From assembly GCA_030704615.1 (NCBI GenBank), contig CM060733.1, positions 28,334,001 through 28,398,000 on the forward strand: a stretch of 64,000 nt of DNA, given 5' to 3'. The notes under the pieces are model-generated. The model saw nothing but the letters and a program-made list of their open reading frames with translations. It made no database searches and was not told the origin of the DNA. This DNA comes from Takakia lepidozioides (lineage: Eukaryota > Plantae > Bryophyta). This document shows positions 9,971 to 61,094 of this stretch, piece by piece. Position 1 is the first letter of the stretch. Every line of letters starts with the position of its first letter. Position numbers and translations under genes: made by a program.

Positions 9971-11659
9971 CTATCCAAGTGTGACAGCCGTGACAGATGA
10001 TATACAAGACATGAAGTCTGCATCTTCCTGCAGTCTCGTTGCAGCATCCTGAGGAAGTTTGAACTGTATTTCTATTGTGCCGTCGTTGTGCTTTGCTGCA
10101 AAAACGATCGCAGAAGGAGGAGTGAACTTCAGTAATATAGCAATATTGGCAAACGGCGGACCCCATCCGAAGTCGAAATGTTCAAGACCTGGGAAATGAG
10201 TGGAACCACCTGCACTCACGTCAGCAAAAGGTCGGAAATCAAAGAGAAAGTAGGATTCCTTTTTCTCTTTCTCCATAATGGTAAGCTGAGATTTGATGTG
10301 GTGAGCGGTGAAATCTGCAATCGTCTTGTGCAGCAGGTTTGCAGCATAAGAGATTCCATTTCCCAGAAGCTCTCTCACGGTAGTTACTGCCACAGCGTCA
10401 AGAACTGCGTTTCCAAAATAATTGGGAGGGAGCTCTAGCCAGCGTTTCCTGCAATCGATGCTATTGAAGTATCGAGTTTCCTCCGTATATGCAAGCAATC
10501 GAGCCCGGGTAATGGCCCTCCAGACATGTGCACTGATCACTACGTAAGCGCTGAACGTAGGCCCATGTGGTGGATCCTGCAATACTTTCTCTTTGAGCTT
10601 CTTTTGCATCGGTACATCAAACAAAATGTGCAAAGTTGTTGAGTTCAGGGCAGTCGCAGGAGGACCCTTCGAATCCCCGGAGGAAGGAAAAGGATTACCC
10701 GACAACGATAATCTCTTCATATAAGCCTTTGGAAGGGAATACTTTATCCAATCTGAGTTGTCTGACTCCGACTCTGATGCCAAGTTGATGACATTCTCTC
10801 GCGAGCTGAAATTGGGAAGAAGGGAGATGCGTTCTCCACGGGCGACCTCTGCCCATGACTTGATAAATTGCCACAGCGTTATTCCATCTACGAGTCCATG
10901 GAAGTAGACAAAACCAACTGCATAGCCGCCACACTTGAGATGAGTGACCTGCGTAATTCAAAGAGAAATGATATCACTCAGAAGGTCGGATTGGGTCACA
11001 CCGAAGTGTACTCGTAAGGTGCTCCGGTACTTTTGCAATGACATACATGTGACCATCACCTTCACACCATAGAAGCACCACAGAAACATAGGTAGCTGAC
11101 CTGGGCGCCAAAAAGAGGGCCGCGGGTATGCCAGGTACCAAAGTCCTGAAGAGTGCAGGGGATTGGTTGCGCAAAGTGTTGATACAGGTCAGCCATGTTG
11201 TAGTTTCTGAGCTCCCGCACAGTGATGGGAGCTGAAGCCTCAACAAACTCCACCCCTGCGTCGTTACAGTCCACGGTTGCCAGCCCGCCTTCGTCTTGTA
11301 CAAACCGACCTGCATGACATATCATGGTCTCCCAATGTCGTTAGCATTCTCTAATAATCGCGTATAGTACTGTAGTCACCATGTCGTCAGAGCTACTGAA
11401 GGGTGGGTTGTTTACCTGCAAATGGGTAGTAGTCTGTCAGCGCTCTTGAGAGACTTTCCCTTAGTCTTTCATTGAACTGATTCACGATGAGGTTTTCTTG
11501 AGCGCTGGCGTCGTACAAGAGCAGGACTCTGAAGGGAGGAAATTTTATCAAGCGGAGATCGAAGCCGGTAAGTTGGAGCCGCAGCAACTCCCGGCTCTCG
11601 TCGGGACGTGGCGTGGGAACCACCATGGATTTTGATAGGACAGTCACTTCCACTCCCAT
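9971..11659 (-). CDS. BAHD acyltransferase (transferase family), copy 1a; 3 exons, about 476 aa
   Basis: Exons 11659-11416, 11309-11101 and 10948-9971 have GT-AG borders and splice in frame. The product has YYPFAGRF, an intron after the conserved Q (GAQ|VT), the catalytic HGLVDG (HXXXD) and a C-terminal DFGWG. Confidence 0.93.
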
Positions 11660-13481
11660 CTTGAATAATGCCGACTTCGCCCGGACTCTCGCTCCAGCCC
11701 TCGAAAGTTTGTGAATTCAGTGAGCTACGTGCAAGCTGGATAGGAATCCAGAGTCAAAGAGTAAGAGATTGATTGAAGGTCAATCATGTCAATCACAAGT
11801 CAGAAAGGAGAAGTTAGAGGTGGAATCCACGAACCGTAGGTGGAAATGGATAGCTCACGCCGACCTGTGAACATCAGAGGAACTTTGAACTGGAATGGAC
11901 ACACCTGTGAGGTCTCCACAGCCCTCGCATATGCGCATCGCGGCCTCTTTAGTTCCAATTGCAACATTACCATGCATGATCCGTTAGGGATGCAACGTAC
12001 ATTGTGGAGGCTGAAGTGCGTGCAGGCTGAAACGGATATAGTTGAGTTGTGATGTAAGGGGCTGTATCGTCCTACCTCAAAAGCAGGCCGACTGCGTAAG
12101 CAGCGCAGATGCAGGGGTGCTGTTGGCCTGTAGTAGGAGCACGCGGCGAGAGGATCGCCGCGGGAGGTTGGCCCTGTCCAACTCCACCAGCTGCCTGCAG
12201 CTCACGAGCAAAGAGAAATAAGAAATTGGACACTCACATCACGGCCAGACCTGAAAGTGCTTTAGGACAAACAACTCGTGGGAGATACGTAAGGATGAGA
12301 CACAAGGAGGAAGTGATCGAATTCAACTGAGCCGCTGGAATATGTCAAGCATCCCATGCTCATGCAAAACACGAAAACACCAAGCTTCGAGTAGTTAGAT
12401 TGAATCCGGTCGCATCACTTTCACCTTACCAAAGACACACGGTGAAGTGCAGATTACAGTTTTCAACCCTCTCTACTTTAAACTGTGCATGATGTGCATC
12501 CGTAACGCTTGCCACCTTCTTACTTCGATGTGAGGTTTAAGGTTTAAAGTCTGACGCTGGGCCCATACGGATCATAAATTCACGGCAGCATCCCAGCTAT
12601 GCATTCCACATATGCAAGTGGGATTTGACACCGTTTATTTAAAGGGACTTAGTGCAGTCCACTTAACTGCCATTGCTGCTAAACATGCTCAAAACTACAT
12701 GCTCAAGAGTGCAAAGAATAAGGAAATGTCGCTGGTCTGGTCACAGGTATAGACACGTCCGCGTCTGTAGGTGCGGTCTGTGTCCAACATACCCAACTCG
12801 GGTGTGCTCACGGGTCCCACTCATCCACTGCAGGCAGCACACCCCACTCGTCACTTGGACTATATGCATAATGTCGAGCTAACTCAGTAATAAGTACATG
12901 TAGCTATAGTTAATGTGAATTAATATCGCCACTTTAATAATGTAAAGTGGTAGATGATGAGTCATGACGCCTTGTCCTCGGAGATGTAACTGGTTATGGA
13001 CTTCAAAGTTCACGAGATCTCTGCCTGCTCCACACTGCGTTGTCGTCATCATGTATACAACTTTGTAGTGACCATGAATACAGTAATGATGAAGGAGGTG
13101 TGAAATATTGTTCAGCAATACGGCAGGAGCCTGGTGCAGGTGTGGAAGCAGGGATGCCAACAGGGCATCAGAAGCTGGTGGCGCTGCTTGGGATTGATGA
13201 GTGGTGCAAGACCCCGGTCTGCTGCTGGGTCTTTCTCTACACGGCCAGAACTGTGGAGGCAGGCACTCGTTACAACTCCAGAGGGTCGACATTGCAAGTA
13301 CGGCTTCGAGGGGGGGAAATAACCTACCCGCCGTCACCACCGTCATTGTTACTTCCCCCAAGTTCCGCTTTGGTAGTGACCTCGTCTTCGGGATTCAAAG
13401 TGAAAACGAAAGCGATCTCTCTCGACTGTATAGGATTCTCTCCCCGCTACTTTCTAAACAGCTAAGACGGAGTGTAGATCC
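11660..13481. promoter_or_regulatory. Divergent intergenic region shared by BAHD and monooxygenase (duplicated at 49398-51218)
   Basis: Head-to-head start codons 1.82 kb apart. The BAHD-proximal 270 bp is conserved with the paralog 2 upstream region (59151-59408). Confidence 0.55.
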
Positions 13482-16400
13482 ATGAAACAGGAGATGGAGT
13501 CACAGAGGAGAACGGTCGATCCAGCAACTGAAAACGGGCATTTGGAACTCGCGGACGATCGTGAATGGGGACCTGTGGAGATGGAAGTGGACGTTGCCAT
13601 AGTCGGAGGGGGACTCGGCGGTCTAGCGCTGGCGTTGGGCCTCCAGACTAGAGGCATACAGGCTCATGTGTTCGAAAAAGCTCCTGCTCTTCGCACTGAC
13701 TCTGCCACTGGCATTAACCTGGCTCTCAACGGTATGTGCCATCGGATGGACACTCTTTAAGGATTCAAGTGATATCAGTAGAAGAACTCCTGAACACTAG
13801 GGACTTGAGCTCTAGAGGGTCTTGCAGTTCTGATCTCGCTAAGGTTCATGTATTCGACTCATCAGCAAGCTAGACCTGTGTGGTAACAAACATCGCCCAT
13901 GAAGGAGGAATAAAACCAGACATGCAAATTGTGGATATAGGAGAGGTGAATTGGGCAGAATCATTCAGTCCAGTTCGCTCGAATTTAAGTTCGCACCCAA
14001 TTTCGACTCGAGAAGTTGGAACTGACCGGAATCATGACTTCATAATGCACATGTGTACGCTGCAATGTTGGCCAGCAACATGTGAGGTGCCTTGAATATC
14101 TAAGTGCAAGAGCAGAACGCAGTTGTAGGGTCCTCGCAGGAGAGTGTAGCTTAACCGATCCACTAGCAGCAGAAGCTCAAGTCTCCCCCACACAAGACCG
14201 GATCTACAGGAATACAGTCCTCATCGTTCACTTTATCGCTAGTGAACAGTGCAAAGCAACGACACTGGAGTACTTCAACGAACTACATAATTGTGTGCAC
14301 TGTCACCTGAAAACTAAGATGTAAACATACAGGTCTGGAGAAATCATTTACCATGTGGGCAACATTTGGTCCAGGTATAATGACCTCGGTGATCCAAGGT
14401 CCAATGAAAGGTCCATACTTTGCAAGGTAAAATTATATATGGCCCAAGTCTAGCAGATAGTCCTATGGACATCGGAATTCTCTTCCGAAAGGTAGGAAAT
14501 TTGATCTGGCATTCGAAGATCGTGTAGCATAACCTGCCCTTGGAGTACATCGCTTGCAGGTATAACGGCACTGAACGGGATGTATCCTGGACTAGCACAG
14601 CAGATGATGGACTATGGCAATAAAAATGTGCGCATCAAGAAAATTATAAGAAGAAGCGGCGAGAAGGACCTCGTCATCCCTATGACACACAAGGTCGGTG
14701 AGTTTGTCACGATTGGCTGGCGCTTCTCGCAGGAGCTCTTGGCAAACCTTGTGGACAAGTCGAGCATTCACTGCGATCATCGCTTCGTTCGTTACAGACC
14801 TGCTCCTGTAAGTTCTTCCTCTCGCAGGAATGTGGAACAATATAAGATTCCCATTCAGTTATTTAACCATGATCGGAATTTGCGGGTCCAACTCTTGTCT
14901 TTCTCACCACCCAACTTTCTTTCTCGCCTCCCATAATCATATGAAACTCCTGGGATCTCGAGCATTATTGAACTATAATTATAACCTGATAACGCAGATT
15001 GCGCACGCAACTCAATCTCATTCAACTAAATATAATCCGATCTTGACATTTCTATTCTTACTCAAACCTCGTTTGCCCCAGGCTCCAAATGCCATGTACG
15101 AAAACTCAGTGTGAATTGCTCAATCCTTAGCACTGGTTTGACCACTCACTACTCCCATGGACCCTTATATGGCATTGTTTTCACAGCTAGGGGGGGATCC
15201 CAGAGGCGACCCCAGAGCCTGGAAAGCGCTCATTAGCTTGCACATTTTGCAGGGAGGTGTGGACGTCGAGTTTCGGACAACTGCAAAAGGCATGGTGGGG
15301 GCCTCTGGCAGTGTAGTTGTTCGAGCTAAGCTACTGGCAGGAGCCGATGGAATGTGGTCAGGGGTGCGGAAAATCATGGTGCCAGAAGATGCTCCCCGTT
15401 ACTTGAACTACCTCAATTGGAACGCAGTTGTCTACAACCCTAATGGAGAGTGAGTCATCATCTTTCGTCTCAGGATTCTTCAACTCTAGGCCCCAACAGG
15501 CCCTTGTTGATGTCCATACCCAGCAGGTGACCCTTGATCCAAGGGGACGTTGACTCTCATGTCACGCGATAAAACTTAAGTGAACTGAATGTGATGGAAC
15601 TGAATATGTAATGGAATAGAATCTGACTAGAATGGAAACCTGAATATAATGGAAATATAGCACTCATCATAGGAATGAAAGGGTGGAAGTAGACACTAAA
15701 TTCTAACATATGAGGGAGCCCTCCACTGCAAATGGGTATTAGCTGGTGAAGCTAAGATCTTCTCATGCAGTATTGACAGGGGGAAAGGTACATCAGGAGA
15801 AAAGAACCGATGGGTGTTCTCTCCTTCAGTGGACAATGGAGCTCTTGACCAAAGAAATCCATATAAGCTTGCTTTATTTATTAAACCTCTGTGAAGCTTC
15901 ATGAAAGACCTAAACGAGACTGTAAGCTTTGAACATGTGACTAAAGCACACAGCCAGCCTGCCAGGAGGGATATATCAATTGACTAGTTGTTATGAACTC
16001 GTATGGAATCTGATATCTGGTTCGTCATGGCAGAGTATTTCCCTATTGCAAAGATGAGGTTCAAATGCTACATGCAGCCAGTGGTCGGGAGGTGGCCTAT
16101 ATCAGTGATCAAGGTACAATCCCAGTGTGGCTCCTTCATTCTATTCTTTGAAGGCAGTTATATCCCAGCTTGTTTGTAACACTGCTTGGGTCTCATAACC
16201 ATGACTATCAACTTGAAACAGGGCGTGGCAACGTACTATGGCACTTGCGTGTTCTGGATAAAACTGGTGAGCTGCAAAAGGACTTCCTTGAAAGGTCAGT
16301 AAAATTTAACAAAAGTGAATCCAAAGCACGGGCATTGCAGCAATTGGCCGACCTTGAAGGCTGGGAGGATTTGATTTCAGCAATCAAGGCAACCGCTGAC

Positions 16401-18452
16401 AGTCTCATATATGAGCGGAGGTCTATGGACCGCTTGCCTTTGAAGAAATGGAGCGATGCTACTGGCCATGTGTTGCTCATTGGGGATGGTAAGTGTCACC
16501 TTCTTTCTAAAGTTTCCTTTGATCTTGACAGCTTCCAGACATGAGCTGGTGCTCTATGAGTACAATGTCTTACACTACATTCAACCTAATGCTTTGTGAT
16601 ACAGTACCCCAAGGCCTGCAAACAAATGAACTCTCATTTAGCTACATGCCCGCTTGCTACTTCGGTGCTTAGTCCCATGTGACCTGGTGGAGTGGATCCA
16701 TTGAGTAAGAGAAGAATGAATTCCCCAGGGGAATAATATACCCAAGGGTTCGAGTCAGCCCACTGCAGGAAGAGAGTGGCTAGGCAAGAGCTGGATGAAG
16801 TCCGGAAATTAGCACATCTCACAACCCCACCCCCGAGAGGAAGCAGTAGGTCTTTGTTACACAGGCTTCGGATGGAGTCTTCTCTCGCACAGTCTTCAAG
16901 TCAATTGCTAGTTTGCGCCTCTCTCTCCAGGCATTCTATGGCAAACAACTTCTCTTGAGTGTACATTTTCTCTAGGTGTTTGGATGATTGATGGATGTCT
17001 CACTTAGCCTGAGGATAGAGACTGGGGGATAACCTGCAGTGAATACCTTTGTGTTGATTGTGCTAAATAAGATAGGCTACAGACAGCTCAGTGTTCTTCC
17101 AAGGATCCGAGATGCCTTGCAGCATATCTCAACGAGGCTTTCCACCATAGCATATCTTTGAAAGTTGAATTGCAGTTTTCTGGTTGTGTGGGGTGGGGGA
17201 CGGGGGGGTGTGCGCATGGTTGCCAGGGGTGCCACTTTTCCTTTTGATTGATCTCATTCTAATTTTCCTACAGCCTTGAACTTCCCGCAGTTGACGTTGT
17301 GAAGTTTCTTTAGGTCTACTGCTTTCTTTCTTTCTCTCTGTTGTCCATTGATTTCTCTCTCACCAAAGAGACGCTCTCTTCAATTCTATCAAGGGAATTG
17401 TGCCTGTACCCCTGTTTACCAACTTTGAAAGTCTCGAGGCTGAGCCAAAAGCCCAGGCCCTCCTGAGGCCTAGTTTTTGGGCAAATCACACACAACAGAT
17501 TGATGCTTGTGTGAAGGGTTTTCTAGAGGATATCTGGAAAACCCGGATTAATTCTTTATATGAAGGTAAGTCTTACTACCAACGTCAGCCCCTGACGGAG
17601 GTAGGTTCTGTTCCTTTTGTTCCCGCTCAAACTGGGCGCGGGGTCAATGGCCACAAGGCTACGGCAAACAACGTCTTATGAGTACAATCTGTTGTCCATT
17701 GATAAGCTGTTTGGGCTCTCCGGGGCTGGATGTTATGATTTGTTTCCTTTCTTTCCCTCTGAATACTTGCAGGCAATTTACTCTGTTCTGCACTTGCTGT
17801 GAGAACAGCTGCGCATGGTATGTACACATCGTTGGGGATGGGGGCACGCCTAGCATTTGAAGATGCACATCAGCTCACCCTCCTTCTGGAGAAGGCTTTT
17901 GAGTCACAGGAAGAGGTCAACATTCCAGTAGCTGTCCACAAGTAAGGAGATCACTTTGAACATCCTGTTGTCATAGTATCACCAGATTAAATATCTTTTG
18001 TGCACTCACTCATTAGTGCTAGACTTTTATGCAAATTGCTACTCTGGTATACAGCGCTTATATAACTAGTACCCTCATGGACATATTCTGGTTATACGAT
18101 ACTTATGTACCTGGGCCCATCTTAGAGTAAACTGGTCGCTTGCACAGGCCTGCATGTCACAGATTCTGCTAACGTTTGCGTCCATTTGACATTAGTTCAC
18201 TTGAACATTGCTTGATGGGGCTGCATCGAATTTTGCACATGTGGTATCAGGTTTGAGGAGATCAGAATGCCAAGGATTAGCCGCCTTCATCAGTATGCAA
18301 CGGAAATGACAGAGCAACCTGAGTTTGTTCCAGAATGGGTCTCCAATCTTTCACCAGAGCAGCAGATGCAGCGCCTCAGTGAGACCTTAAGCTGGACCGG
18401 CAAGTACCCAGACTGCATGGATGGTGACCCCAGCTCAACTTACTGGAAATAG
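13482..18452 (+). CDS. FAD-dependent monooxygenase (group A flavoprotein, FAD_binding_3 type), intact; 7 exons, about 458 aa
   Basis: Exons 13482-13731, 14560-14807, 15253-15449, 16034-16113, 16222-16488, 17809-17941 and 18251-18452 are all GT-AG with compatible phases (1377 nt). Motifs: VAIVGGGLGG (GxGxxG), AGADGMWS (DG), LIGD|AAH (GD), GMGARLAFEDA. Confidence 0.92.
17353..17687 (+). mobile_element. Intronic 335-bp insertion, probable 5'-truncated non-LTR retrotransposon (mirror at about 45187-45521)
   Basis: 16-bp direct repeat TCTGTTGTCCATTGAT at 17337-17352 and 17688-17703. The empty site is seen at about 3840 and 41340. The insert carries an ORF C-terminus (..GFLEDIWKTR..). Confidence 0.75.
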
Positions 18453-27741: not shown

Positions 27742-27742
27742 A
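27205..27742 (+). pseudogene. Protein-kinase-like N-lobe fragment (continuation of ORF 21097)
   Basis: EGGYAKVRQC (Gly loop), ELAGKK (VAIK-like), QHLGVISYFA, LTWALVCIMDIVHN (helix before the catalytic loop). Frameshift near 27445; cut at 27742. Confidence 0.6.
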
Positions 27743-27919
27743 CCCGGTTATGAGCGTCACGTCCGTCCGTCAGCGTCAGGTCACGTCAGACCTGACGTTG
27801 ACGGCGTCAGGTTCGGGGAATATTCTGGTAAAAATAGTAGCAGGTAAAATACTGCCACTTGAGCAATCACGTCGCCAACACGATGGCGGTGGAAAATACA
27901 TTTTGAAAATTAACAAAAT

Positions 27920-37508: not shown

Positions 37509-37509
37509 C

Positions 37510-44804: not shown

Positions 44805-45147
44805 GCAATACACCACCGCCTTCATTTCCTTCTCATGCGTAGGTCACCGTCGCTCCACTTCATTCAATTTCTTACTTTTGTAAGCCAGTGGACGTCCATC
44901 CTGCATGAGCACACCCCCTATTGCGAAGTCCGACGCGTCCGTATGAATCTCAAATGGACGTCGAACTCCGAGATTTTGAGGACTGGAGCTTCCGCCATCC
45001 GCTGCTTCAACTCGGCAAAAGCTTGGCCACAAAAGGTGTTCCATACCCAGACTTTGGATTTACACAGAAGGTCTGACAGCGGCCCCCTGATCTTGGCGAA
45101 ATTTCTCACATATTTCCGGTAATAGGAGGCGAGTCCTAGGAATGATC
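43400..45147 (-). mobile_element. Mirror copy of the chimeric Gypsy + Tcn1-like fragment
   Basis: Reverse complement of 1-1780, extended by about 340 bp of RT/RNase H ([27 protein letters not shown]). Has an extra internal deletion of about 370 bp near 44440. Confidence 0.88.
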
Positions 45148-49397: not shown

Positions 49398-51218
49398 GGA
49401 TCTACACTCCGTCTTAGCTGTTTAGAAAGTAGCGGGGAGAGAATCCTATACAGTCGAGAGAGATCGCTTTCGTTTTCACTTTGAATCCCGAAGACGAGGT
49501 CACTACCAAAGCGGAACTTGGGGGAAGTAACAATGACGGTGGTGACGGCGGGTAGGTTATTTCCCCCCTCGAAGCCGTACTTGCAATGTCGACCCTCTGG
49601 AGTTGTAACGAGTGCCTGCCTCCACAGTTCTGGCCGTGTAGAGAAAGACCCAGCAGCAGACCGGGGTCTTGCACCACTCATCAATCCCAAGCAGCGCCAC
49701 CAGCTTCTGATGCCCTGTTGGCATCCCTGCTTCCACACCTGCACCAGGCTCCTGCCGTATTGCTGAACAATATTTCACACCTCCTTCATCATTACTGTAT
49801 TCATGGTCACTACAAAGTTGTATACATGATGACGACAACGCAGTGTGGAGCAGGCAGAGATCTCGTGAACTTTGAAGTCCATAACCAGTTACATCTCCGA
49901 GGACAAGGCGTCATGACTCATCATCTACCACTTTACATTATTAAAGTGGCGATATTAATTCACATTAACTATAGCTACATGTACTTATTACTGAGTTAGC
50001 TCGACATTATGCATATAGTCCAAGTGACGAGTGGGGTGTGCTGCCTGCAGTGGATGAGTGGGACCCGTGAGCACACCCGAGTTGGGTATGTTGGACACAG
50101 ACCGCACCTACAGACGCGGACGTGTCTATACCTGTGACCAGACCAGCGACATTTCCTTATTCTTTGCACTCTTGAGCATGTAGTTTTGAGCATGTTTAGC
50201 AGCAATGGCAGTTAAGTGGACTGCACTAAGTCCCTTTAAATAAACGGTGTCAAATCCCACTTGCATATGTGGAATGCATAGCTGGGATGCTGCCGTGAAT
50301 TTATGATCCGTATGGGCCCAGCGTCAGACTTTAAACCTTAAACCTCACATCGAAGTAAGAAGGTGGCAAGCGTTACGGATGCACATCATGCACAGTTTAA
50401 AGTAGAGAGGGTTGAAAACTGTAATCTGCACTTCACCGTGTGTCTTTGGTAAGGTGAAAGTGATGCGACCGGATTCAATCTAACTACTCGAAGCTTGGTG
50501 TTTTCGTGTTTTGCATGAGCATGGGATGCTTGACATATTCCAGCGGCTCAGTTGAATTCGATCACTTCCTCCTTGTGTCTCATCCTTACGTATCTCCCAC
50601 GAGTTGTTTGTCCTAAAGCACTTTCAGGTCTGGCCGTGATGTGAGTGTCCAATTTCTTATTTCTCTTTGCTCGTGAGCTGCAGGCAGCTGGTGGAGTTGG
50701 ACAGGGCCAACCTCCCGCGGCGATCCTCTCGCCGCGTGCTCCTACTACAGGCCAACAGCACCCCTGCATCTGCGCTGCTTACGCAGTCGGCCTGCTTTTG
50801 AGGTAGGACGATACAGCCCCTTACATCACAACTCAACTATATCCGTTTCAGCCTGCACGCACTTCAGCCTCCACAATGTACGTTGCATCCCTAACGGATC
50901 ATGCATGGTAATGTTGCAATTGGAACTAAAGAGGCCGCGATGCGCATATGCGAGGGCTGTGGAGACCTCACAGGTGTGTCCATTCCAGTTCAAAGTTCCT
51001 CTGATGTTCACAGGTCGGCGTGAGCTATCCATTTCCACCTACGGTTCGTGGATTCCACCTCTAACTTCTCCTTTCTGACTTGTGATTGACATGATTGACC
51101 TTCAATCAATCTCTTACTCTTTGACTCTGGATTCCTATCCAGCTTGCACGTAGCTCACTGAATTCACAAACTTTCGAGGGCTGGAGCGAGAGTCCGGGCG
51201 AAGTCGGCATTATTCAAG

Positions 51219-52907
51219 ATGGGAGTGGAAGTGACTGTCCTATCAAAATCCATGGTGGTTCCCACGCCACGTCCCGACGAGAGCCGGGAGTTGCTGCGGC
51301 TCCAACTTACCGGCTTCGATCTCCGCTTGATAAAATTTCCTCCCTTCAGAGTCCTGCTCTTGTACGACGCCAGCGCTCAAGAAAACCTCATCGTGAATCA
51401 GTTCAATGAAAGACTAAGGGAAAGTCTCTCAAGAGCGCTGACAGACTACTACCCATTTGCAGGTAAACAACCCACCCTTCAGTAGCTCTGACGACATGGT
51501 GACTACAGTACTATACGCGATTATTAGAGAATGCTAACGACATTGGGAGACCATGATATGTCATGCAGGTCGGTTTGTACAAGACGAAGGCGGGCTGGCA
51601 ACCGTGGACTGTAACGACGCAGGGGTGGAGTTTGTTGAGGCTTCAGCTCCCATCACTGTGCGGGAGCTCAGAAACTACAACATGGCTGACCTGTATCAAC
51701 ACTTTGCGCAACCAATCCCCTGCACTCTTCAGGACTTTGGTACCTGGCATACCCGCGGCCCTCTTTTTGGCGCCCAGGTCAGCTACCTATGTTTCTGTGG
51801 TGCTTCTATGGTGTGAAGGTGATGGTCACATGTATGTCATTGCAAAAGTACCGGAGCACCTTACGAGTACACTTCGGTGTGACCCAATCCGACCTTCTGA
51901 GTGATATCATTTCTCTTTGAATTACGCAGGTCACTCATCTCAAGTGTGGCGGCTATGCAGTTGGTTTTGTCTACTTCCATGGACTCGTAGATGGAATAAC
52001 GCTGTGGCAATTTATCAAGTCATGGGCAGAGGTCGCCCGTGGAGAACGCATCTCCCTTCTTCCCAATTTCAGCTCGCGAGAGAATGTCATCAACTTGGCA
52101 TCAGAGTCGGAGTCAGACAACTCAGATTGGATAAAGTATTCCCTTCCAAAGGCTTATATGAAGAGATTATCGTTGTCGGGTAATCCTTTTCCTTCCTCCG
52201 GGGATTCGAAGGGTCCTCCTGCGACTGCCCTGAACTCAACAACTTTGCACATTTTGTTTGATGTACCGATGCAAAAGAAGCTCAAAGAGAAAGTATTGCA
52301 GGATCCACCACATGGGCCTACGTTCAGCGCTTACGTAGTGATCAGTGCACATGTCTGGAGGGCCATTACCCGGGCTCGATTGCTTGCATATACGGAGGAA
52401 ACTCGATACTTCAATAGCATCGATTGCAGGAAACGCTGGCTAGAGCTCCCTCCCAATTATTTTGGAAACGCAGTTCTTGACGCTGTGGCAGTAACTACCG
52501 TGAGAGAGCTTCTGGGAAATGGAATCTCTTATGCTGCAAACCTGCTGCACAAGACGATTGCAGATTTCACCGCTCACCACATCAAATCTCAGCTTACCAT
52601 TATGGAGAAAGAGAAAAAGGAATCCTACTTTCTCTTTGATTTCCGACCTTTTGCTGACGTGAGTGCAGGTGGTTCCACTCATTTCCCAGGTCTTGAACAT
52701 TTCGACTTCGGATGGGGTCCGCCGTTTGCCAATATTGCTATATTACTGAAGTTCACTCCTCCTTCTGCGATCGTTTTTGCAGCAAAGCACAACGACGGCA
52801 CAATAGAAATACAGTTCAAACTTCCTCAGGATGCTGCAACGAGACTGCAGGAAGATGCAGACTTCATGTCTTGTATATCATCTGTCACGGCTGTCACACT
52901 TGGATAG
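51219..52907 (+). CDS. BAHD acyltransferase, copy 1b (inverted duplicate of 9971-11659)
   Basis: Exons 51219-51462, 51569-51777 and 51930-52907. ORF translations are identical to copy 1a, with HGLVDG and DFGWG. Confidence 0.93.
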
Positions 52908-54976
52908 GAACACCACAAATCCAACCGCACTACACAAACGAATAAAATGAGATTGTTGGTGTTGATGATGTTGTTAGATTTACTACAGATATACGATCAT
53001 AATAAAAATCTGCATGTTCTTCTCTGCCATCTTCGCATCTTGTAGATCTCTTCTGATTACCCTTGCTTCGACTTATCAGCACCCTTGCTGCAGTTTTTGT
53101 AACGATCTCATTGCAGCTGCTTCTCTGTTTGCTATCACTGCAGCCTTCTACTGTGAGGCAGCTCGTCTTCTAGTTTTGCTTTGCTGGCCCAGTGTTGACC
53201 CCCGGGTTAAATCCCCATCCAATTGTGGGCTTTATTTAAACAATAGGAGTAATGTAAGGACTTATGCGTGCATATGAAGTAGGCGGCGGGCCGGTCAAAT
53301 CCTCCCCACCCACGCTCTCGTGCAATCAGTGTCGTTGCCCCTGCATCGTGTAGCCTTGCGACGTCCCGCCTGTGAAATTGGCCCAGTTCTCCATCCCCGC
53401 CCCATGTAACCCCATCTCGTGTCACCCCGGCCCATGTATTCCCATCTTGTGTCACCCCACCCCATGTAACTCCATCTCCTAATCCCATCTCATGTCATTA
53501 CCAATCGTGTCACCTCAGACCATGTAGCCCCATCTCCTCTCGACCCATGTAACTCCTTCTGTGTCATTCCAGGTTATGAATGAAACCTTATCTCATGTCA
53601 TCCCAGGCCACGTAGCCCCTTCTAGGGTCATTCCTGATCGGGTCACCCCACCCCATGTCTCTGTTATTTGCCCCATGTAACCCCATCCCGTGTCACCCCA
53701 GACCTATACCCCATCTCATGTCAACCCTTCTCTGTCACTCCAGCCCATTCAATCTCATAAAGTGTCACACCCCCAAATGGTGTGAAGTGTGACTCCGGCT
53801 AATCTAACCCCACGAATGTAACCCCAATGCACCTGATCTGTTTTATGTGCCAATGATCTAGCAGCTGGAATTTAATTTACATATCGTCGAAACCCTAATC
53901 TACTATCTTTATCGTTTTCCTTTTGCTCTTTGTTCATGGTTTGGAGCCTCAATTTCTTGTGATTATGAGTTTTCTGTGGCGTCTACAATGTACTGCTTTC
54001 AAAAACCAAATCAAAGGGGACAGAAAATTATTGAGTTCCATTGCAGGACAACATCTTACTCCCAGCAATCCAAAAAATGGTTTGTTGGCCGTAGTACCAC
54101 GTTTCATTCGGTTGTCTCTATCCTTTCTCAATGTCATTCTTGTTGTTTTGTTGCTCTCCCTCCTGCAACCATAGCACCTACCATATGCCTATTTAATCTA
54201 CAGTTGTTTGTCTTTTGGTCCCTCCCACGAGAGTTTCATTGACGACTGCTGTTGTTGTTCACAAAGTGATACATATCCACTTGTTATGTTCTACATGTTT
54301 TTTTTCTTAACAGGGAAATTGAAAGTGAAGAACAATTCTTCTTTCACTGGACTACCTTAGTGAGGGGCTACAGACATGGGAGAGAGAGAAAGAGGAAATG
54401 AGAGTGATGGAAGGGCTCCTTCACGGCATGGTTCCAAAGAGCGAGAAAGTAACAGACATTATAATGACCACAAAAAGCTCAAAGAGCTTATGGGAGAGAG
54501 AGAATGAAAAAGACAGGATGCTTCTAACTTACAGGAAAAGCCCAAGCCCAAAGAGCTTTTGTGACAACAATGAGCCTTGACAGCCATAAGAGAAATGAAA
54601 TGAAATGGTACTTTACAACGTCTGCGGGAAGCTCAAAAGCTAAAGAGGGATAGTAGCCTCAGAAGCTTTACATAGAGGTCCAAAAAAGACCGAAGACTAC
54701 ATTTTAAAACAAAAAAAAAAAAATCTGAGAAAGAAATGTGGTGATAATTGTACCCCGCCGGCGGATTGACACGAGGAATGAGGGCACTCCAGAGGTAGAT
54801 GATCTTATGGTTTCGTTTTATCAATGCAAAGGGTGATAGGATGGGATGACACGATCTAGGGTTACATCAGGTGGGGTGACACGAGATGGAGTTACGTGTG
54901 TTGGGGTTACAAGGAACTGGTGGAATGGGGGACTCAATGAACGGGAAGAACCGGCAGCCAGTTACATGCCAGCCGA

Positions 54977-57900
54977 GTGCCATCCTGGAATTTCCGGGTA
55001 TGACATGAAACCTCCGGAAAATGAACCGACGGGAAAAATGGCCCAAGAGGAAATCATCCGAGTGCCTGACTCAGAGGACGGATTTTTGCCTTTCCGTATC
55101 AGTAAATGCCGGAAATATGCCTTAGTTGGCACGCCTGGACGGATTCCAGCCGTTCTTATCTTATAAGAAAACGGAAAATGGCCGTTGAATACTGCCACGT
55201 GCCGGAAATCCAGCATGCAGGGCCCAGGCCTGGTTACATCCAACGGACGGGGTCAGGGTGGTTGGGGGCAAACCCTAGAAGAGACTAGAAGAGCCTTGCC
55301 ACGTGGCGGAAATCCAGCATGCCAGGGCCCACGCCTGGTTACATCCAACGGACGGAGCCAGGGTGGTTGGGGGCAAACCCTAGAAGAGCCTTGCACTCGT
55401 TCTTTACTAAGTCCTTTGCTCACCTACCGGGCCCGCACTTACCACTGGCTGTATGTTGATGTGCTGCCGACGCTCCCGCCTGCTTGTACTCGCTGCGTGC
55501 TACCACACTTCAAGGCCCAGGCATGTTTTCAGCCTTGCATTCGTTCTTTGCTAAGTCCTTTGCTCACCTGCCGGCCCGCACTTACCACTGGCTATATGTT
55601 GATGTGCTGCCGACGCTCCCGCCTGCTTGTACTCGCTGCGTGCTACCACACTTCAAGGCCCAGGCATGAGTCTTTGTTTCATTTGGTTATGTCCTTGCTT
55701 TTCCTAGTGAGAGGTTATGACTTTTGCCTTTCGAAGTCTACAGCTACATGACTTTCTGCATACTTTGTGCTCGTCATGCAGTAAAAAACAAGGGCATTGG
55801 TAGGCCTCCCCCTTCGGTTCTTCTACCGTTCTTTCGACCACGGTTTCTATTGTTTTGCAGCAGGCACAAAGCCGTGTCTATTTTGTGTCGGGCAAAGGCG
55901 GCTGGGAGGGCTGCATCTCACCTCCCACCGATTTCTGACCCACCTCCCCTTCTATTTTCTGATTTGCTTCAGGCAGTTGGCAGGCCTTGCACTCGTTCTT
56001 TGCTAAGTCCACATCTCACCTGCCGGGGCCCGCACTTACCACTGGCTGTATGTTGATGTGTTGCCGACGCTCCCGCCTGCTTGCACTCGCTGGCCCTTCC
56101 TTGTTGCAATTTCCGTGCTATAAATTTGTATTTTTGTAAGGTCTTGGCTATGGCCAAGCGCCAAAGGAATCTAAGAAATATGTTATTTAGGGCTGGTCAC
56201 ACTGGTGATTGTGATGAGGAGTCTCCTTCCGCTGTCCCCCTGCCTCATCTTCAAGTGGTATGGACAAGCCATCGAATAGTGTAGAGGCAGCCCAGAAAGC
56301 ATGGAAAGATGTTTGGTACACTCAATTTGATTGGATTGAGTTTAACCATGATCTAGGTAGGATTTTTTTGTAAAGTTTGTAGAGGGAAAGGAGGGAGGAC
56401 AGTCTTTGCAAATGCTGGTTGTGTCAATGTCAAGGTGAGTTCATTCCAAGACCATGCTAGGTCAGAAGAGCATCGTAAGTTCTCTTGGGCCCTACAATCT
56501 GGTAAGAAAGCCATGGAGAAAGCCATAGCTAGTGCTAATCGAGCTTGTGATGATGCTGTTTTGGCTCTTTTCCAAGTTGCTTACTACATTGGTTTGGAGG
56601 CCTTGCCATTTAGCAAATTTCCAGGTTTGTGTCAACTTTTGGTTACTCTCAAAGCTTGTATTACCCAGAAACTGTACCATGATGAGAAGTCATGTGCTGA
56701 TATATTGTATTGTATCTCATGTGTTGTTCAGAAAAAGGTGTTGGATAGAGTGAAGGATTCCAAGTACTATGGAATCATGATAGATGAGTCAACTAACATT
56801 TCAGTGACCGGTCATCTTGTTGTTTTTGCTTCTTTTGTTGAAGAGGGTTTGCCAGTCACTCTGTTTTGGGATTACTTCAGATTATTGATGGCAAGAAGGA
56901 TGCCGCAATGATATATGAGTGTTTACTAACTAGTTTGAAAGAGTGGGGTTTGGATGTAGATAAGTTTTTGGGGTTTGGTTCGGATGGGGCAGCAACCATG
57001 GTGGGGGCTCGATCCGGCGTGGCTGCTCGTCTTAAGCAAAAGGTAAACCCCTTTATGTTGGCCGTCCATTGCGTAGCACATAGGACCAACTTGGCAGCAT
57101 TAGAAGCTGCCAAGACATCAGCATGCATCTTATTTCAAATGAGGTTGACACACTTTTGAACTCTTGCTGGTCATTTTCGCAAATCATCTAAGCGTAAGGC
57201 AACCTTGCAAGCTTTGCAGACCGAGCTTAATGATGCTCAGAAGTGCCTCAAAAGGTTTCACAAGATTCGTTGGTTATCTAGGTGGCAGGCCGTGACATCG
57301 CTTTGTGACAGTCTTGAGAGTGTTGTCACGTATTTTAGAGATGTGCCGGTTGCCAATGATGATGGATCAGCCTCTCTTTTGTATAACAAGCTTAGGTCAT
57401 TCAAAATGATTTATGTCTTGTATTTTTTGGCTGATATGTTGCACGGTCTATCTCTACTCTCACGTGTGTTCCAATGGAAGTTTGTGGATGTAACTAGCAT
57501 TGGGTCCATAGTTAAGACAAAGATTGCACAAATACGAATGTTTTTCATTGAGGATAGCACGGATTTGAACCAATCCACCTTCAATGAGGAAATGGGTTAT
57601 CACATCATCCCGGAATTTGGTCCTCCTGGTGGGTATTTGAGGCGGCTAGCCTCTGAGATTAGGGGATCCAATTTTCATGGTGTACAAATGACACGAGAGA
57701 GGATGGGGGGTGATTTGGAGGCAGCACTTACCTTCCAAAAGCTTTATGCAGAGGCTGTTTGCAATGCTTTGGATGCCAGATTTGAGGACAACGGAGTTGT
57801 AAGTGCATTCAAAATATTGAGTCCATGTAACCTACCAACTAGACAAGTGGGGTTAGCAAGTTGGGGTGTAGTAGAGTTGGAAATATTATGTGCGCACTAT

Positions 57901-58788
57901 GGTGTCGAAAGACATATTGCAGGAAGGACATTGCCTGCCCTTGTTGACATAGCAGCGGTGAAACGAGAGTTCTTTGCTTTCAAACTACAGGCAAGTACCG
58001 AGTGGATGGAGAAAACTTTCAAGGATCTTTGGGGCATGGTGACTTGGAACCCTTCTCTAACGATGAAGTATGAAAACTTGCTTGTGCTTTCTGAAATTGC
58101 TCGAGTTCAATGTGTAAGCACTGCCGCATGTGAGAGGGCATTCTCAGTTCAAAACTCAATCAAAACTAAATTTCGAAACAAGTTGAAAACAAAGAACTTG
58201 GAAAGTGTGCTTCGTGTTGCTTTGGAAGGGCCAAGTGTGCAGGCATGTCAACCTGTTTTGATTGAGGCCATATCTTTGTGGAAGAACTCCACAAACTTCA
58301 GACATTTGTTCTCTCATCCTGAGCTATATTTAGCTGGACAGCCAATAGCTGGACAACCAGAAGGTGGGCCATCATATGCAGAAGGTACGAATGATGATTT
58401 GCAGTTTTGAATTTATGTTTGTTTGTTTGTTTAGATAGGTAACGTTTCTAAAATTCAAGGCCCATCAACTTTTGGTTGAGGTCATTGCATTTTAGAAGGG
58501 TTCGATCCTTGGCCTCCAACTGGTGGAGGGCATTGACAGGTTCAACTCCTGCCAAGGATACTTTTCTGCACTTGTTTGAATTGCTTAAAATTGGTTGTGA
58601 TTATTTATTGTTGTTCATTTGTTGAATTTGTATGCAGCCGAATTTAATTTTCATTTGCAGGAAATGAACCGGTTGATATGTACAATGGCCGGATTTATAG
58701 CCGAACACACCCAAAAAAAAAAGGAATATTACCGGTTGTAAAACAATATGTAGGAAATTGACCGCCTGAAGTTACCACTAAGGGGCAG
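54977..58788 (+). mobile_element. hAT-superfamily element (boundaries tentative)
   Basis: Flanked by the direct repeat CAGCCGA (54970-54976, 58789-58795). Carries internal tandem repeats of about 103 bp and 143 bp (55197-56090) and a transposase. Confidence 0.6.
56150..58410 (+). pseudogene. hAT transposase (ZNF862/ZMYM-like), frameshifted
   Basis: W..QFDWI..CKVC zinc finger, IMIDEST, GFGSDGAATMVG..GVAARL, HCVAH, RWLSR and the hATC dimerisation motif VSTAACERAFS..IKTKFRNKL. Frameshifts near 56370, 56866 and 57130-57165. Confidence 0.88.
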
Positions 58789-59408
58789 CAGCCGACCCCC
58801 CAACCCACTTAGCCGGTTGGTGTTGAAAATGAGCGGCCACTGGCTGGTTCAACTCAAAAATTTTCCCGGACACTGGGGGGACTGGTGTCGCAGGGCGACG
58901 AAGCGAGGGGTTGACAACGCCTATTGGATGAGAGCGGGGTGGGGAGAATTTGACCGAGCCCGTGGCGTGCCAATCGCCGGAGGCGGAAAACCGGTGGTAC
59001 TGGGTGTTAGACCCGCCAACGCCTCGCATTAAGTTCTTACATTATTCCCATTTATTTTCCTGAATCCGTAGTCCCTGGGCCAATAAATCATAAATCCGCG
59101 GGAAGCCCCACGAGCTTCAGGTGAGCCTGTCAGTGAGTGCAGTACGTAGGTGCGAGGGCTGTGGAGGAGACGTTACACAAGTGCCCACTTCCCGTTCTAT
59201 TCCTCACTTTCACCTGAGGTTCGTGTCCAGTTCTAGCTACTCCCTCCTGACTCGTAATCGATTGGCATTGACATTGATGGAGCTTTGAACAATCATTTTC
59301 TTTATTTGACTCTGGATTCCTATTCAGTTGGCACCTAGCTCAGTACTAAGCCCACAACTTTCGAGGGCTGCAGTGAGCTGAGTCCCGGTGAAGTCGACAT
59401 TATTCAAA

Positions 59409-61094
59409 ATGGGAGTGGAAGTGATTGTCGTATCGAGAACCATGGTGGTTCCCACGCCATATCCTCACCAGAGCCGGGAGTTGCAGCGGCTCCCACTGAC
59501 AAGCTTCGATATACGCATGATAAGATGTCCTCCTGTCACATGCATGCTCCTGTTCGATGCCAGCGCTAAAAAAGAATTCAGTGTGGAGCAGTTCAATGAA
59601 AGATTACGGGAGAGTCTTTCAGGAGCGTTGGCAACCTACTACCCATTTGCAGGTAAATCATACACCCTTCTGTAGCACCGATTACCAAAGTCTGTCGTGC
59701 CAGTTTTGGTATCTAGGCTTCCGGGAAACTAGATAACGACGTTGAGAGACCATGACATGTCATACAGGCCGGTTTGTACAAGATGACGACGGGCAGACAG
59801 CCGTGGACTGTAACGACGCAGGGGTTGCGTTTGTTGAGGCTTCAGCTCCCATCACGGTGCGGGAGCTAAGTAATTACAACATGGCTGACATGTATCAACA
59901 GTTTACCCAAGCAATCCCCTTCCATTGGAAGGACTTTGGTATCTGGCATACCCGCGGCCCTCTTTTTGGCGCCCAGGTGAGCTTCCTATATCTCTGTGTC
60001 CTTAAATGGCTTCTATTTCCGGCGTGAAGATGATGATCACACGTCTTTGGGAAGTAGTAGATTAGCAGTTTTGGGTGACCCACTTTGAGTTTTGGTTTGA
60101 TATCGATTCTCTTTGAAATACGCAGATCACTCATCTCAAGTGTGGCGGCTATGTAGTTGGTTATGCCTACTTCCATGGAATCGCAGATGGAATAACAATG
60201 TGGCAATTTTTGAAGTCGTGGGCAGAGGTCGGCCGTGGGGAACGCATCTCCCTTCCTCCCAATTTTAGTTCGCGCGCGAATGTTATGAAATTGGCATCAG
60301 AGTCAGAAAACTCAGATTGGACGGAAACCTTTCGAAATGCTTTTGCTAAGAGACTACCGTTGTCGGGTAACGGTTACGTCAAGGATTCAAAGGGTCCTCC
60401 TACGACTCGTGCCCCAGACCCAACAACTTTGCACATTTTCTTTGATCTACCGATGCAAAAGAAGCTCAAAGGCAAAGCAGTGGACAATTCACCAGGTGGA
60501 TCTACGTACAGTGCTTATGTAGTGATCAGTGCACATGTCTGGCGGGCCATTACCCGAGCTCGATTGCTTGCAGATACGGAGGAAACTCGATTCTTCAATA
60601 TCGTGGATTGCAGGAACCGGTGGCCAGAGCTCCCTGAGAATTATTTTGGAAATGCAATTCTTGACGCAGTGGCAAGCACCACCGCGGGAGAGCTTTCGGG
60701 AAATGGAATCTCATACGCGGCAAACCTGCTGCAGAAGACGATTGCAGATCTCACAGCTCAACACATCAAGTCTTTTTTTACCATGACGGAGAAAGAAAAG
60801 AAGGAATGGCTCATTGTCAAAGATTTTCGACCTTTGACTGATGTGCTTACAGCATGTTCGACTCGGTTCCCAATTCTTGAACATTGTGACTTCGGATGGG
60901 GTCCGGCTTTTGCCTATACTGCCTTCTACAACAATAAGTCTCCCGTCAACCCCATGATCACTTATACACCACAGCATAGCAATGGCACAATAGAAATAAA
61001 CTTCAATCTGCCGCCCGATGCTGCGACGAGACTGCAGGAAGATGCAGACTTCATGTCTTGTGTATCGTCTGTCACGCCTGTCACACTTGGATAG
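59409..61094 (+). CDS. BAHD acyltransferase paralog 2; 3 exons, about 473 aa
   Basis: Exons 59409-59652, 59768-59976 and 60126-61094, with the same intron positions as copy 1. Motifs YYPFAGRF, HGIADG and DFGWG; clearly diverged from copy 1. Confidence 0.92.

What the first reader, a model, noticed from the sequence alone, without database searches (positions are those of the whole stretch)
9971..61094. Candidate specialised-metabolism gene cluster: head-to-head BAHD acyltransferase + FAD monooxygenase, amplified
Seen: the only host genes in 64 kb are two non-homologous enzyme types. There are three BAHDs with intact HXXXD and DFGWG motifs, and one intact plus three partial group A flavoprotein monooxygenases. 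BAHD and monooxygenase are divergent across 1.8 kb and were duplicated as a unit. Known: BAHDs make acyl-CoA-derived esters and amides, and group A monooxygenases hydroxylate or epoxidise mostly aromatic substrates. Plant biosynthetic clusters often arise in TE-rich regions. Inference: an oxidise-and-acylate module, possibly part of an undescribed non-seed-plant pathway. No scaffold-forming enzyme is in the window, so the substrate is unknown.
Basis: partly seen in the sequence, partly recalled or inferred. Interest (0 to 1): 0.8.

Follow-up and report, generated by a model that had tools for sequence, protein, structure and literature searches.

The report
Duplicated moss acyltransferase–flavin monooxygenase gene pair
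A moss genome region holds one complete, transcribed head-to-head pair of an acyl-transferring enzyme gene and a flavin oxidase gene, plus a nearly identical mirror copy and broken leftovers; it is a plausible but unproven two-gene metabolic module, not yet a gene cluster.

Summary
There are three intact BAHD genes (476, 476 and 473 aa, each with HXXXD and DFGWG). There is one intact seven-exon group A flavin monooxygenase (MO1, 453 aa) and three partial copies. The BAHD1 and MO1 start codons lie 1,822 bp apart on opposite strands. An 8.8 kb block carrying BAHD plus MO exons 1-5 recurs inverted, about 99.95% identical across the genes.

Spliced contigs in two public runs show both gene types are transcribed. 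A BAHD 5'UTR exon narrows the shared promoter to about 0.8 kb or less.

The "amplification" is mostly debris. Only one pair is complete. The second MO is interrupted after exon 5 by a gypsy fragment. Two fragments lack exons 1-2 and the conserved C-terminus and evolve neutrally.

There are only two enzyme types, so this is an expanded gene pair, not a cluster in the strict sense. No BAHD lies beside the MO homologues examined in Ceratodon, Sphagnum, Diphasiastrum and an unidentified plant contig, but most belong to another MO subclade. An unidentified plant in metagenomes has a different BAHD directly upstream of a different MO subclade member.

Functional coupling is untested; I put it at about 0.3. 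The scan had flagged other BAHD-containing candidate clusters in this genome, but not this pair.

The parts
9971..11659 (-). BAHD1 coding region: exons 11416-11659, 11101-11309 and 9971-10948; 476 aa; HGLVD and DFGWG intact
   Evidence: PF02458 hits; splice joints in RNA contigs; frames and motifs
12076..12458 (-). BAHD1 5'UTR exon, joined to exon 1 across the intron 11736-12075
   Evidence: X1 contig spans 12076-12458 and 11415-11735 with a CT..AC (GT..AG on the minus strand) joint
12459..13255 (.). Shared divergent promoter region, at most ~800 bp between the outermost transcribed bases seen for the two genes
   Evidence: BAHD contig reaches 12458 and the MO contig starts at 13256. These are contig ends, not mapped transcription starts
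13482..18452 (+). MO1, intact group A flavin monooxygenase, 453 aa; exons 13482-13731, 14560-14807, 15253-15449, 16034-16113, 16222-16488, 17809-17941, 18266-18452
   Evidence: GT..AG joints for introns 1, 3 and 4; RNA loose ends that continue into exon 6; intron 2 only inferred, from a paralogue contig with 61 unaligned letters plus GT/AG sites and frame. Exon 6/7 junction by frame and homology only. PF01494/FAD motifs
8949..17726 (+). Duplicated block B (BAHD1, promoter, MO1 exons 1-5)
   Evidence: Self-BLAST 99.17% to 53944-45148; differences pile up in a minisatellite at 8949-9330
45148..53944 (-). Inverted copy B' (BAHD2, promoter, MO2 exons 1-5)
51219..52907 (+). BAHD2, coding sequence identical to BAHD1
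   Evidence: Exact matches of all three exons
46391..49397 (-). MO2, exons 1-5 only; interrupted in intron 5
   Evidence: tblastn of MO1 exon peptides; exact exon matches
43967..45147 (-). Gypsy integrase fragment joining B' to A'. Its counterpart at window 1-1213 carries integrase domains
   Evidence: Self-BLAST to 24837-26435; PF17921 and PF00665 on 9-593 and 581-1117
40635..43400 (-). MO fragment in block A' (exon 3 cut at residue 4, through exon 7); conserved C-terminus lost
1780..4567 (+). MO fragment in block A (exon 3 cut at residue 4, through exon 7); C-terminal 12 codons and the stop codon deleted
738..7600 (+). Block A, paralogous to A' (37574-44440, inverted); 85 substitutions (ts:tv 2:1) and 7 indels
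59409..61094 (+). BAHD3, an older solo paralogue: 473 aa, 69.8% aa identity to BAHD1, no MO beside it
55185..58410 (+). hAT transposase remnant upstream of BAHD3
   Evidence: PF05699
23387..26872 (+). Ty3/gypsy element (protease, RT, integrase, chromodomain) in the spacer between the inverted blocks

Best explanation
This is an expanded gene pair in a TE-rich region of a non-seed land plant. Earlier scan notes call it a moss; I did not check that. BAHD1 and MO1 form the single complete unit: two intact, unrelated enzyme genes transcribed outward from a shared promoter region of at most ~0.8 kb. The other copies come from rearrangement in two phases. An older phase (about 1.3-1.6% divergence) made a partial MO copy (exon 3 to exon 7) fused to a gypsy integrase fragment, and then duplicated it. 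In a very recent event, duplication or gene conversion, the 8.8 kb BAHD plus MO 5' block became present twice in inverted orientation. The second MO is interrupted after exon 5, and the two fragments are pseudogenes. BAHD3 is an older solo duplicate. Inferred mechanism: MO1 has no obvious transit peptide and would use FAD and NAD(P)H to hydroxylate or epoxidise a small molecule. BAHD1 would transfer an acyl group from an acyl-CoA to a hydroxyl or amine. The shared promoter would couple their expression. Whether they act on consecutive steps of one pathway is not shown; I put that at about 0.3.
For: Gene models and motifs. Family membership. Transcription and splicing of both genes in run X1, and of MO in X2. 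Independent DNA contigs from SRR327418 and SRR327456 cover 7544-15304, i.e. the A-B junction region, BAHD, promoter and MO 5' end. Duplication structure. A vs A' shows a natural mutation spectrum (57 transitions, 28 transversions, 7 indels). Site patterns give 17 sites grouping (A,A') against (B,B'), 12 private to A and 15 private to A'. B vs B' differ by 1 substitution in 2,090 bp. The fragments lack exons 1-2 and the C-terminal motif, with dN/dS of at least 1. The category 'gene pair with an expansion' and its bidirectional-promoter precedent: PMC9298681.
Against: Expression evidence comes from assembled contigs only. It gives no levels, no strand and no copy assignment. The BAHD contigs carry the variants of the SRR327418 copy, not those of the window copy. 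BAHD dN/dS is high (0.66 between BAHD1 and BAHD3; 0.58 against the SRR327418 copy). That fits either relaxed constraint or diversifying selection. The near-identity of B and B' could also be an assembly duplication, and no DNA reads were laid on the junctions. The exon 6/7 junction of MO1 has no RNA support.
Confidence: 0.6

Rival explanations
1. True two-step metabolic module. MO1 oxidises a substrate and BAHD1 acylates the product or a neighbouring group. The head-to-head layout is kept by selection for co-inheritance and co-expression, and the locus seeds an undescribed bryophyte pathway.
For: A shared promoter of at most 0.8 kb, with both genes transcribed in the same run. Both genes sit on lineage-restricted, divergent branches: BAHD is at most ~30% identical to named proteins, and MO1 is ~50% identical to its nearest full-length relative. 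A second BAHD-MO adjacency exists in another organism, in contigs L012 and L013. I estimate chance at roughly 1-2% over the ~9 homologue loci inspected.
Against: There is no scaffold-forming gene and only two enzyme types. The second adjacency involves a different BAHD clade (23% identity to BAHD1), a different MO subclade and a different orientation. It is therefore not conserved synteny. Ceratodon, which has the closest annotated homologue of that MO, has no BAHD there. The extra copies in the window decay instead of being maintained. Other BAHD-containing candidate clusters are flagged on the same genome piece, so BAHDs may be numerous here, which would raise chance adjacency.
Confidence: 0.3
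2. Chance neighbours. Two unrelated genes were brought together by TE-driven rearrangement in a gene-poor region, with no shared pathway. Any co-expression is a by-product of promoter sharing.
For: The region is dominated by gypsy, MULE-like and hAT remnants. Duplication junctions carry TE fragments. No BAHD lies within 10 kb of the MO homologues in Sphagnum, Diphasiastrum, Ceratodon (two loci) or the 234 kb contig behind L011. BAHD3 exists without an MO.
Against: A second BAHD-MO adjacency in another organism is unlikely by chance alone. The negative synteny loci belong mostly to the other MO subclade. The two contigs of the MO1 subclade have under 600 bp of upstream flank.
Confidence: 0.5
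3. The inverted near-identical block B' is an assembly artefact, so there are two BAHDs in the window, not three, and MO2 would not exist as a separate interrupted copy.
For: B and B' differ by only 3 substitutions and 4 small indels over 8.4 kb. An earlier follow-up on the same genome piece reported a mirror-image assembly fold-back elsewhere.
Against: B' is not error-ridden and its coding sequences are identical. Its two flanks differ from those of B. It is separated from B by 27 kb of distinct TEs, not by a hairpin tip. Its partner block A' differs from A by 1.3% with a natural ts:tv of 2:1. The order is A-B versus A'-B', each inverted, which is not a simple palindrome.
Confidence: 0.1

Closest known systems
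Expanded specialised-metabolism gene pairs, e.g. the Capsicum EAS-EAH pairs driven by a bidirectional promoter (as reviewed in PMC9298681)
   Same: Two non-homologous enzyme genes lie head to head, share a short promoter region, and are repeated locally in a TE-rich region.
   Different: The enzyme types differ: BAHD plus group A flavin monooxygenase here, terpene synthase plus P450 there. No product is known, only one of the repeated pairs is intact, and a shared pathway is unproven.
BAHD acyltransferases, nearest solved structures being HCT-type hydroxycinnamoyl transferases (PDB 6dd2, 4g22, 5kjt)
   Same: PF02458 domain, HXXXD and DFGWG motifs, length of ~475 aa, and the intron placed just before the VT.L.CGG block.
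   Different: Only ~25-30% identity to any named BAHD. The only near relative found is the same species' own copy (P0001). The acyl donor and acceptor cannot be assigned.
ZEP-like ~435-aa group A flavin monooxygenase clade, auto-named 'zeaxanthin epoxidase' in Cryptomeria and Klebsormidium
   Same: GXGXXG, GADG and GDAAH motifs, PF01494 across the homologues, and a shared C-terminal YP..M.GDP.STYWK(P). MO1 is ~49% identical to Cryptomeria P0039.
   Different: This is not true ZEP. These proteins are ~435-480 aa and Pfam finds only FAD-binding domains in them, whereas ZEP is, from general knowledge, ~660 aa with an FHA domain. MO1 also has an acidic N-terminus unlike a transit peptide. I found no described function for the clade. 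MO1 belongs to a subclade I did not find in Ceratodon or Sphagnum.
Fungal and bacterial tailoring flavin monooxygenases (CtdE, MAK1-like monooxygenase, TropB, salicylate hydroxylase)
   Same: Same fold family by sequence. These are the best solved matches to the family (E about 1e-12 to 1e-14 for P0039).
   Different: The similarity is remote and gives no substrate-level inference. The plant clade spans streptophytes, with introns, so recent transfer is unlikely.

Membership tests
BAHD acyltransferase (PF02458) | Match to the Transferase family profile above the curated cut-off | tested here: met
   Exon 3 ORFs score 76-96.5 bits against a cut-off of 22.7. Exons 1 and 2 score 32-37 bits each.
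BAHD acyltransferase (PF02458) | Catalytic HXXXD motif and structural DFGWG motif | tested here: met
   HGLVD (BAHD1/2) and HGIAD (BAHD3); DFGWG in all three.
BAHD acyltransferase (PF02458) | Uninterrupted full-length reading frame of ~430-480 aa | tested here: met
   476, 476 and 473 aa, with GT..AG introns. Two introns of BAHD1 are confirmed by RNA joints.
BAHD acyltransferase (PF02458) | Acyl-CoA-dependent acyl transfer activity | not testable with these tools
   Needs an enzyme assay.
Group A flavoprotein monooxygenase (PF01494, FAD_binding_3) | Profile match | tested here: met
   The exon 1 ORF scores 27.2 bits against a cut-off of 22. Full-length homologues at ~49% identity match PF01494 end to end, e.g. 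P0039 at 3.2e-24. The spliced MO1 protein itself was not scanned, because the joined step was left out.
Group A flavoprotein monooxygenase (PF01494, FAD_binding_3) | GXGXXG dinucleotide fold, DG motif and GD motif in one polypeptide, with no separate NAD(P)H domain | tested here: met
   GGGLGG (exon 1), GADGMWS (exon 3), IGD|AAHG (exons 5/6); 453 aa in total.
Zeaxanthin epoxidase proper | ~660-aa plastid protein with a C-terminal FHA domain (from general knowledge) | tested here: not met
   MO1 is 453 aa and ends in the short-clade motif. No FHA domain was found in its exons or in the homologues scanned against Pfam.
Plant biosynthetic gene cluster, strict definition (PMC9298681) | [quoted passage not shown] | tested here: not met
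   Only BAHD and MO were found among the ORFs scanned; everything else is transposon-derived.
Plant biosynthetic gene cluster, strict definition (PMC9298681) | The genes contribute to one pathway | not testable with these tools
   Needs metabolite and enzyme data.
Gene pair with expansion (PMC9298681) | Adjacent metabolic genes of distinct origin, with local duplication | tested here: met
Gene pair with expansion (PMC9298681) | Linkage conserved in related genomes | tested here: inconclusive
   No BAHD lies within 10 kb of the homologues in Sphagnum, Diphasiastrum, Ceratodon (two loci) and L011, or anywhere on the 14.3 kb contig L014. Most of these belong to the other subclade. The MO1-subclade contigs L010 and L017 have only 576 and 359 bp upstream. 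A non-orthologous BAHD-MO adjacency exists in L012/L013.

The most novel reading that the evidence does not exclude
BAHD genes have become neighbours of this ZEP-like monooxygenase family more than once in bryophyte-grade plants: head to head in this window, and tail to head with other family members in an unidentified metagenome plant. No angiosperm member of the monooxygenase family turned up in my search. If so, the family would carry out an oxidation whose product is habitually acylated, marking an undescribed pathway outside flowering plants.
Probability: 0.15. Interest if true: 0.7.

Novelty: new member of a known kind. Interest (0 to 1): 0.35.

Why it matters
Characterised biosynthetic gene clusters outside flowering plants are very few. 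The review read here names momilactone in the moss Calohypnum and taxol in Taxus (PMC9298681). A transcribed, promoter-sharing BAHD/flavin monooxygenase pair would therefore be a cheap, concrete target for knockout and metabolite profiling in a moss. It would also give a first functional handle on a streptophyte-wide monooxygenase clade with no described role. The locus is also a clean example of how TE-associated rearrangement makes and breaks copies of such pairs. As it stands it is one candidate among many such neighbour pairs in plant genomes, and the evidence does not lift it above that.

Tried and rejected
1. PDB search with MO exon 3 alone gave only chance matches.
2. A paper search for SRR327418, to name the species, found nothing. 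The species remains unidentified by me.
3. A metagenome scan with the MO family alignment used a peptide pattern that spans an exon boundary in plants. It returned only intronless bacterial relatives at 21-30% (short segments up to 41%), no plant-type MO exons and no BAHD. It gave no further plant loci.
4. I looked for the protein kinase ORF that another first-stage note places at 20303-27742.
5. Literature searches for a described BAHD plus flavin monooxygenase pairing, or for a description of this MO clade, found none.
6. Recent horizontal transfer of MO1 is rejected. The clade runs from Klebsormidium to conifers, the genes have introns, and the next hits are bacterial at about 1e-33.
7. An error-ridden assembly fold-back is rejected for A/A' because the mutation spectrum is natural. 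It is not excluded for B/B'.
8. The spliced MO1 and BAHD proteins were never joined for a search, fold or tree. All searches went exon by exon by reference, so there is no full-length phylogeny or structure of the window's own proteins.


Full report
**What is in the window**

Self-comparison shows that much of the window consists of a few blocks that recur, separated by transposon remnants.
- Block B (8949-17726) recurs inverted as B' (53944-45148) at 99.17% identity.
- Block A (738-7600) recurs inverted as A' (44440-37574) at 98.26%.
- A ~2.1 kb piece occurs four times: 1781-3855, 15263-17352, 41335-43397 and 45522-47616.
- The region 59290-61107 is 79% identical to 9958-11775.

The transposon remnants between the blocks are:
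- a Ty3/gypsy element with protease, RT, integrase and chromodomain (23387-26872);
- a MULE-like ORF set with a SWIM finger (30687-34227);
- a gag ORF (35108-36697, minus strand);
- a hAT remnant (55185-58410);
- gypsy integrase fragments at 1-1213 and 43967-45147.

Among about 50 ORFs scanned against Pfam, nothing but BAHD, FAD-binding and transposon domains appeared.

**The BAHD genes**

All three loci hit PF02458. Spliced contigs from run X1, together with reading frames, give the following models:

| Gene | Strand | Coding exons | Protein | Motifs |
|---|---|---|---|---|
| BAHD1 | - | 11416-11659, 11101-11309, 9971-10948 | 476 aa | HGLVD, DFGWG |
| BAHD2 | + | 51219-51462, 51569-51777, 51930-52907 | identical to BAHD1 | HGLVD, DFGWG |
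| BAHD3 | + | 59409-59652, 59768-59976, 60126-61094 | 473 aa | HGIAD, DFGWG |

- BAHD1 also has a 5'UTR exon at 12076-12458.
- BAHD1 and BAHD3 are 69.8% identical in protein, with dN/dS 0.66.
- BAHD1 against the copy in an independent DNA run (L001, SRR327418) gives 96.6% identity and dN/dS 0.58. Constraint is therefore weak, or selection is diversifying.
- The only close relative in 5.8 billion proteins is that same species' copy (P0001). Named proteins reach only about 30% identity.
- The nearest solved structures are HCT-type hydroxycinnamoyl transferases, for example Selaginella 6dd2 at 3.9e-24.
- No donor or acceptor can be assigned.

**The monooxygenase**

RNA joints with GT..AG ends fix introns 1, 3 and 4. 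Loose ends of contigs read straight into exon 6. Intron 2 is inferred from a paralogue contig with 61 unaligned letters plus matching GT/AG sites and frame. With frames checked exon by exon, MO1 has seven exons:
- 13482-13731
- 14560-14807
- 15253-15449
- 16034-16113
- 16222-16488
- 17809-17941
- 18266-18452

This gives 453 aa with GGGLGG, GADGMWS and IGD|AAHG motifs. The exon 6/7 junction rests on frame and homology only.

An exhaustive HMMER search with exon 5 found only 32 relatives. Their names and an alignment-based search define a distinct clade of ~435-aa proteins:
- It occurs in Klebsormidium, Edaphochlamys, mosses (Ceratodon with two members, Sphagnum), lycophytes (Diphasiastrum, Selaginella) and conifers (Cryptomeria, Taxus, Pinus).
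- Some members are auto-named 'zeaxanthin epoxidase'.
- No angiosperm member was listed.
- The next hits are bacterial salicylate-hydroxylase-like proteins at about 1e-33.
- Homologues match PF01494 end to end.
- Their best solved relatives are tailoring monooxygenases such as CtdE and TropB, at about 1e-12 to 1e-14.
- MO1 ends in the clade's conserved C-terminal motif.

Exon by exon, MO1 is closest to P0099 (a Logan transcript), Cryptomeria P0039 and Diphasiastrum. For exon 5 these are 58-63% identical, against 38-40% for Ceratodon and Sphagnum. MO1 therefore belongs to a subclade that I did not find in those annotated mosses.

**The copies**

tblastn of the seven exon peptides against the window gives four copies:
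- MO1, complete.
- MO2, exons 1-5 (49397-46391, minus strand), identical to MO1.
- Two fragments that start inside exon 3 and run to exon 7 (1780-4567 and 43400-40635).

In the inverted copy, MO2's intron 5 runs into a gypsy integrase fragment (45147-43967). About 570 bp of sequence I could not match to anything else follows, and then the A' fragment.

The A-type fragments:
- lack exons 1-2;
- have lost the last 12 codons and the stop codon through an 82 bp deletion;
- show dN/dS of at least 1.

They are pseudogene pieces.

**Age and reality of the duplicates**

From 9330 to 17726, B and B' differ by 3 substitutions and 4 small indels. The remaining differences lie in a minisatellite at 8949-9330. 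A and A' differ by 85 substitutions (57 transitions, 28 transversions) and only 7 indels, spread evenly. That is a natural spectrum, not the signature of an error-ridden fold-back.

In the four-copy segment:
- A, A' and the B lineage are almost equidistant (1.3-1.6%);
- B and B' differ at 1 site in 2,090;
- 17 sites group (A,A') against (B,B'), 12 are private to A and 15 are private to A'.

So there was an older round of rearrangement and then a very recent duplication or gene conversion of B.

Independent Logan contigs from SRR327418 and SRR327456 reproduce 7544-12167 and 12162-15304, so the pair and the A-B junction region exist outside this assembly. The contigs break where the four-copy repeat begins. 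The B' junctions were not checked with DNA reads, so an assembly duplication of B remains possible at about 0.1.

**Expression**

Both runs hold intron-less contigs with canonical joints, so they are RNA.
- X1 covers BAHD exons 1-3 and the 5'UTR exon, plus MO exons 1-5.
- X2 covers MO only, at roughly tenfold lower depth. The absence of BAHD there is therefore uninformative.
- The BAHD contig reaches 12458 and the MO contig starts at 13256, so the untranscribed gap is at most about 800 bp.
- The low-depth BAHD contigs carry the SRR327418-type variants.
- Other contigs are 5-9% divergent, so more expressed paralogues of both families exist elsewhere in the genome.

Contigs cannot give levels, strand or copy assignment.

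**Linkage elsewhere**

I fetched the surroundings of MO homologues in the following loci:
- Sphagnum troendelagicum (L002);
- Diphasiastrum (L003, L004);
- Ceratodon (L006, L007);
- a 234 kb ENA contig (L011);
- ENA and Logan contigs L014-L016;
- MO1-subclade contigs L010 and L017.

None has a BAHD, either by gene calls or by tblastn with BAHD1, BAHD3 and L012 BAHD peptides. However, L010 and L017 have only 576 and 359 bp of upstream flank, and the well-flanked loci are mostly of the other subclade. Conservation among true orthologues is therefore untested.

One look-up was positive. Contigs from three JGI metagenomes and one Logan run (L012 and L013) carry an intact BAHD (HLLWD, DFGWG) ending about 350 bp upstream of a co-oriented MO homologue.
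- That MO is closest to Ceratodon P0097, at 70%.
- That BAHD is nearer to feruloyl- and benzoyl-transferase-like proteins (36%) than to BAHD1 (23%).
- Ceratodon's own P0097 locus has no BAHD.

It is thus a second, non-orthologous adjacency. As a rough estimate, with some tens of BAHD genes per genome, chance adjacency is about 0.1-0.2% per locus. That gives about 1-2% over the roughly nine loci examined. This is suggestive, not decisive. Earlier scan notes also list several other BAHD-containing candidate clusters on the same genome piece. That hints at a large BAHD family here, which would raise the chance rate.

**Classification**

[quoted passage not shown] It names 'gene pairs' and 'pairs and arrays' (gene pairs with an expansion) as separate categories, and cites Capsicum EAS-EAH pairs under a bidirectional promoter. 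This locus fits the second category. I found no description of a BAHD plus group A flavin monooxygenase pairing in plants, nor of this monooxygenase clade's function.

**Verdict**

There is a real, transcribed, promoter-sharing pair of specialised-metabolism-type enzymes. But it is a two-type gene pair, its 'amplification' is mainly broken copies, its linkage is not shown to be conserved, and no substrate is known.

I put the probability that the two enzymes act in one pathway at about 0.3.

Noticed in passing
L012:4153-6987 and L013:206-4122: In an unidentified plant from JGI metagenomes (also present in one Logan run), an intact BAHD ends ~350 bp upstream of a co-oriented homologue of the monooxygenase. 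Both genes belong to different subclades from those in the window.
   Followed up: partly
MO family (proteins P0039-P0105): The ~435-aa ZEP-like monooxygenase clade appears in a streptophyte alga, a chlorophyte, mosses, lycophytes and conifers. No angiosperm member was listed, and I found no paper describing it. The absence rests on a word-limited search.
   Followed up: partly
window 8949-9483 and 53395-53944 (also 8266-8450): A minisatellite at the outer edge of the duplicated block holds nearly all the differences between B and B' (indels of 10-25 bp). It may mark the duplication breakpoint.
   Followed up: no
window 10650-16649 (run X1): Besides near-identical contigs, X1 holds contigs of both BAHD and MO that differ by 5-9% and have higher depth. 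More-diverged, expressed paralogues of both families therefore exist elsewhere in the genome. Whether they are also paired is unknown.
   Followed up: no
window 1213-1780 and 43400-43967: About 570 bp of sequence with no match outside A/A' joins a truncated gypsy integrase fragment to a monooxygenase copy cut inside exon 3. It looks like filler at a repaired break.
   Followed up: no
window 20110-21513 and 27185-27977: Another first-stage note places an intronless protein kinase ORF in 20303-27742. Pfam scans of ORFs in and beside that stretch gave no kinase hit at E <= 0.01, only protease, RT, integrase and chromodomain hits from the gypsy element plus a weak copia-type gag hit.
   Followed up: partly
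protein P0006: One BAHD hit is annotated from the whitefly Bemisia tabaci, an insect. This fits my recollection of a reported plant-to-whitefly BAHD transfer, not checked here, and is unrelated to this locus.
   Followed up: no
window 61638-63032: A degenerate tandem array (~73-80% identity between copies) lies downstream of BAHD3. Other findings of the scan already cover it.
   Followed up: no
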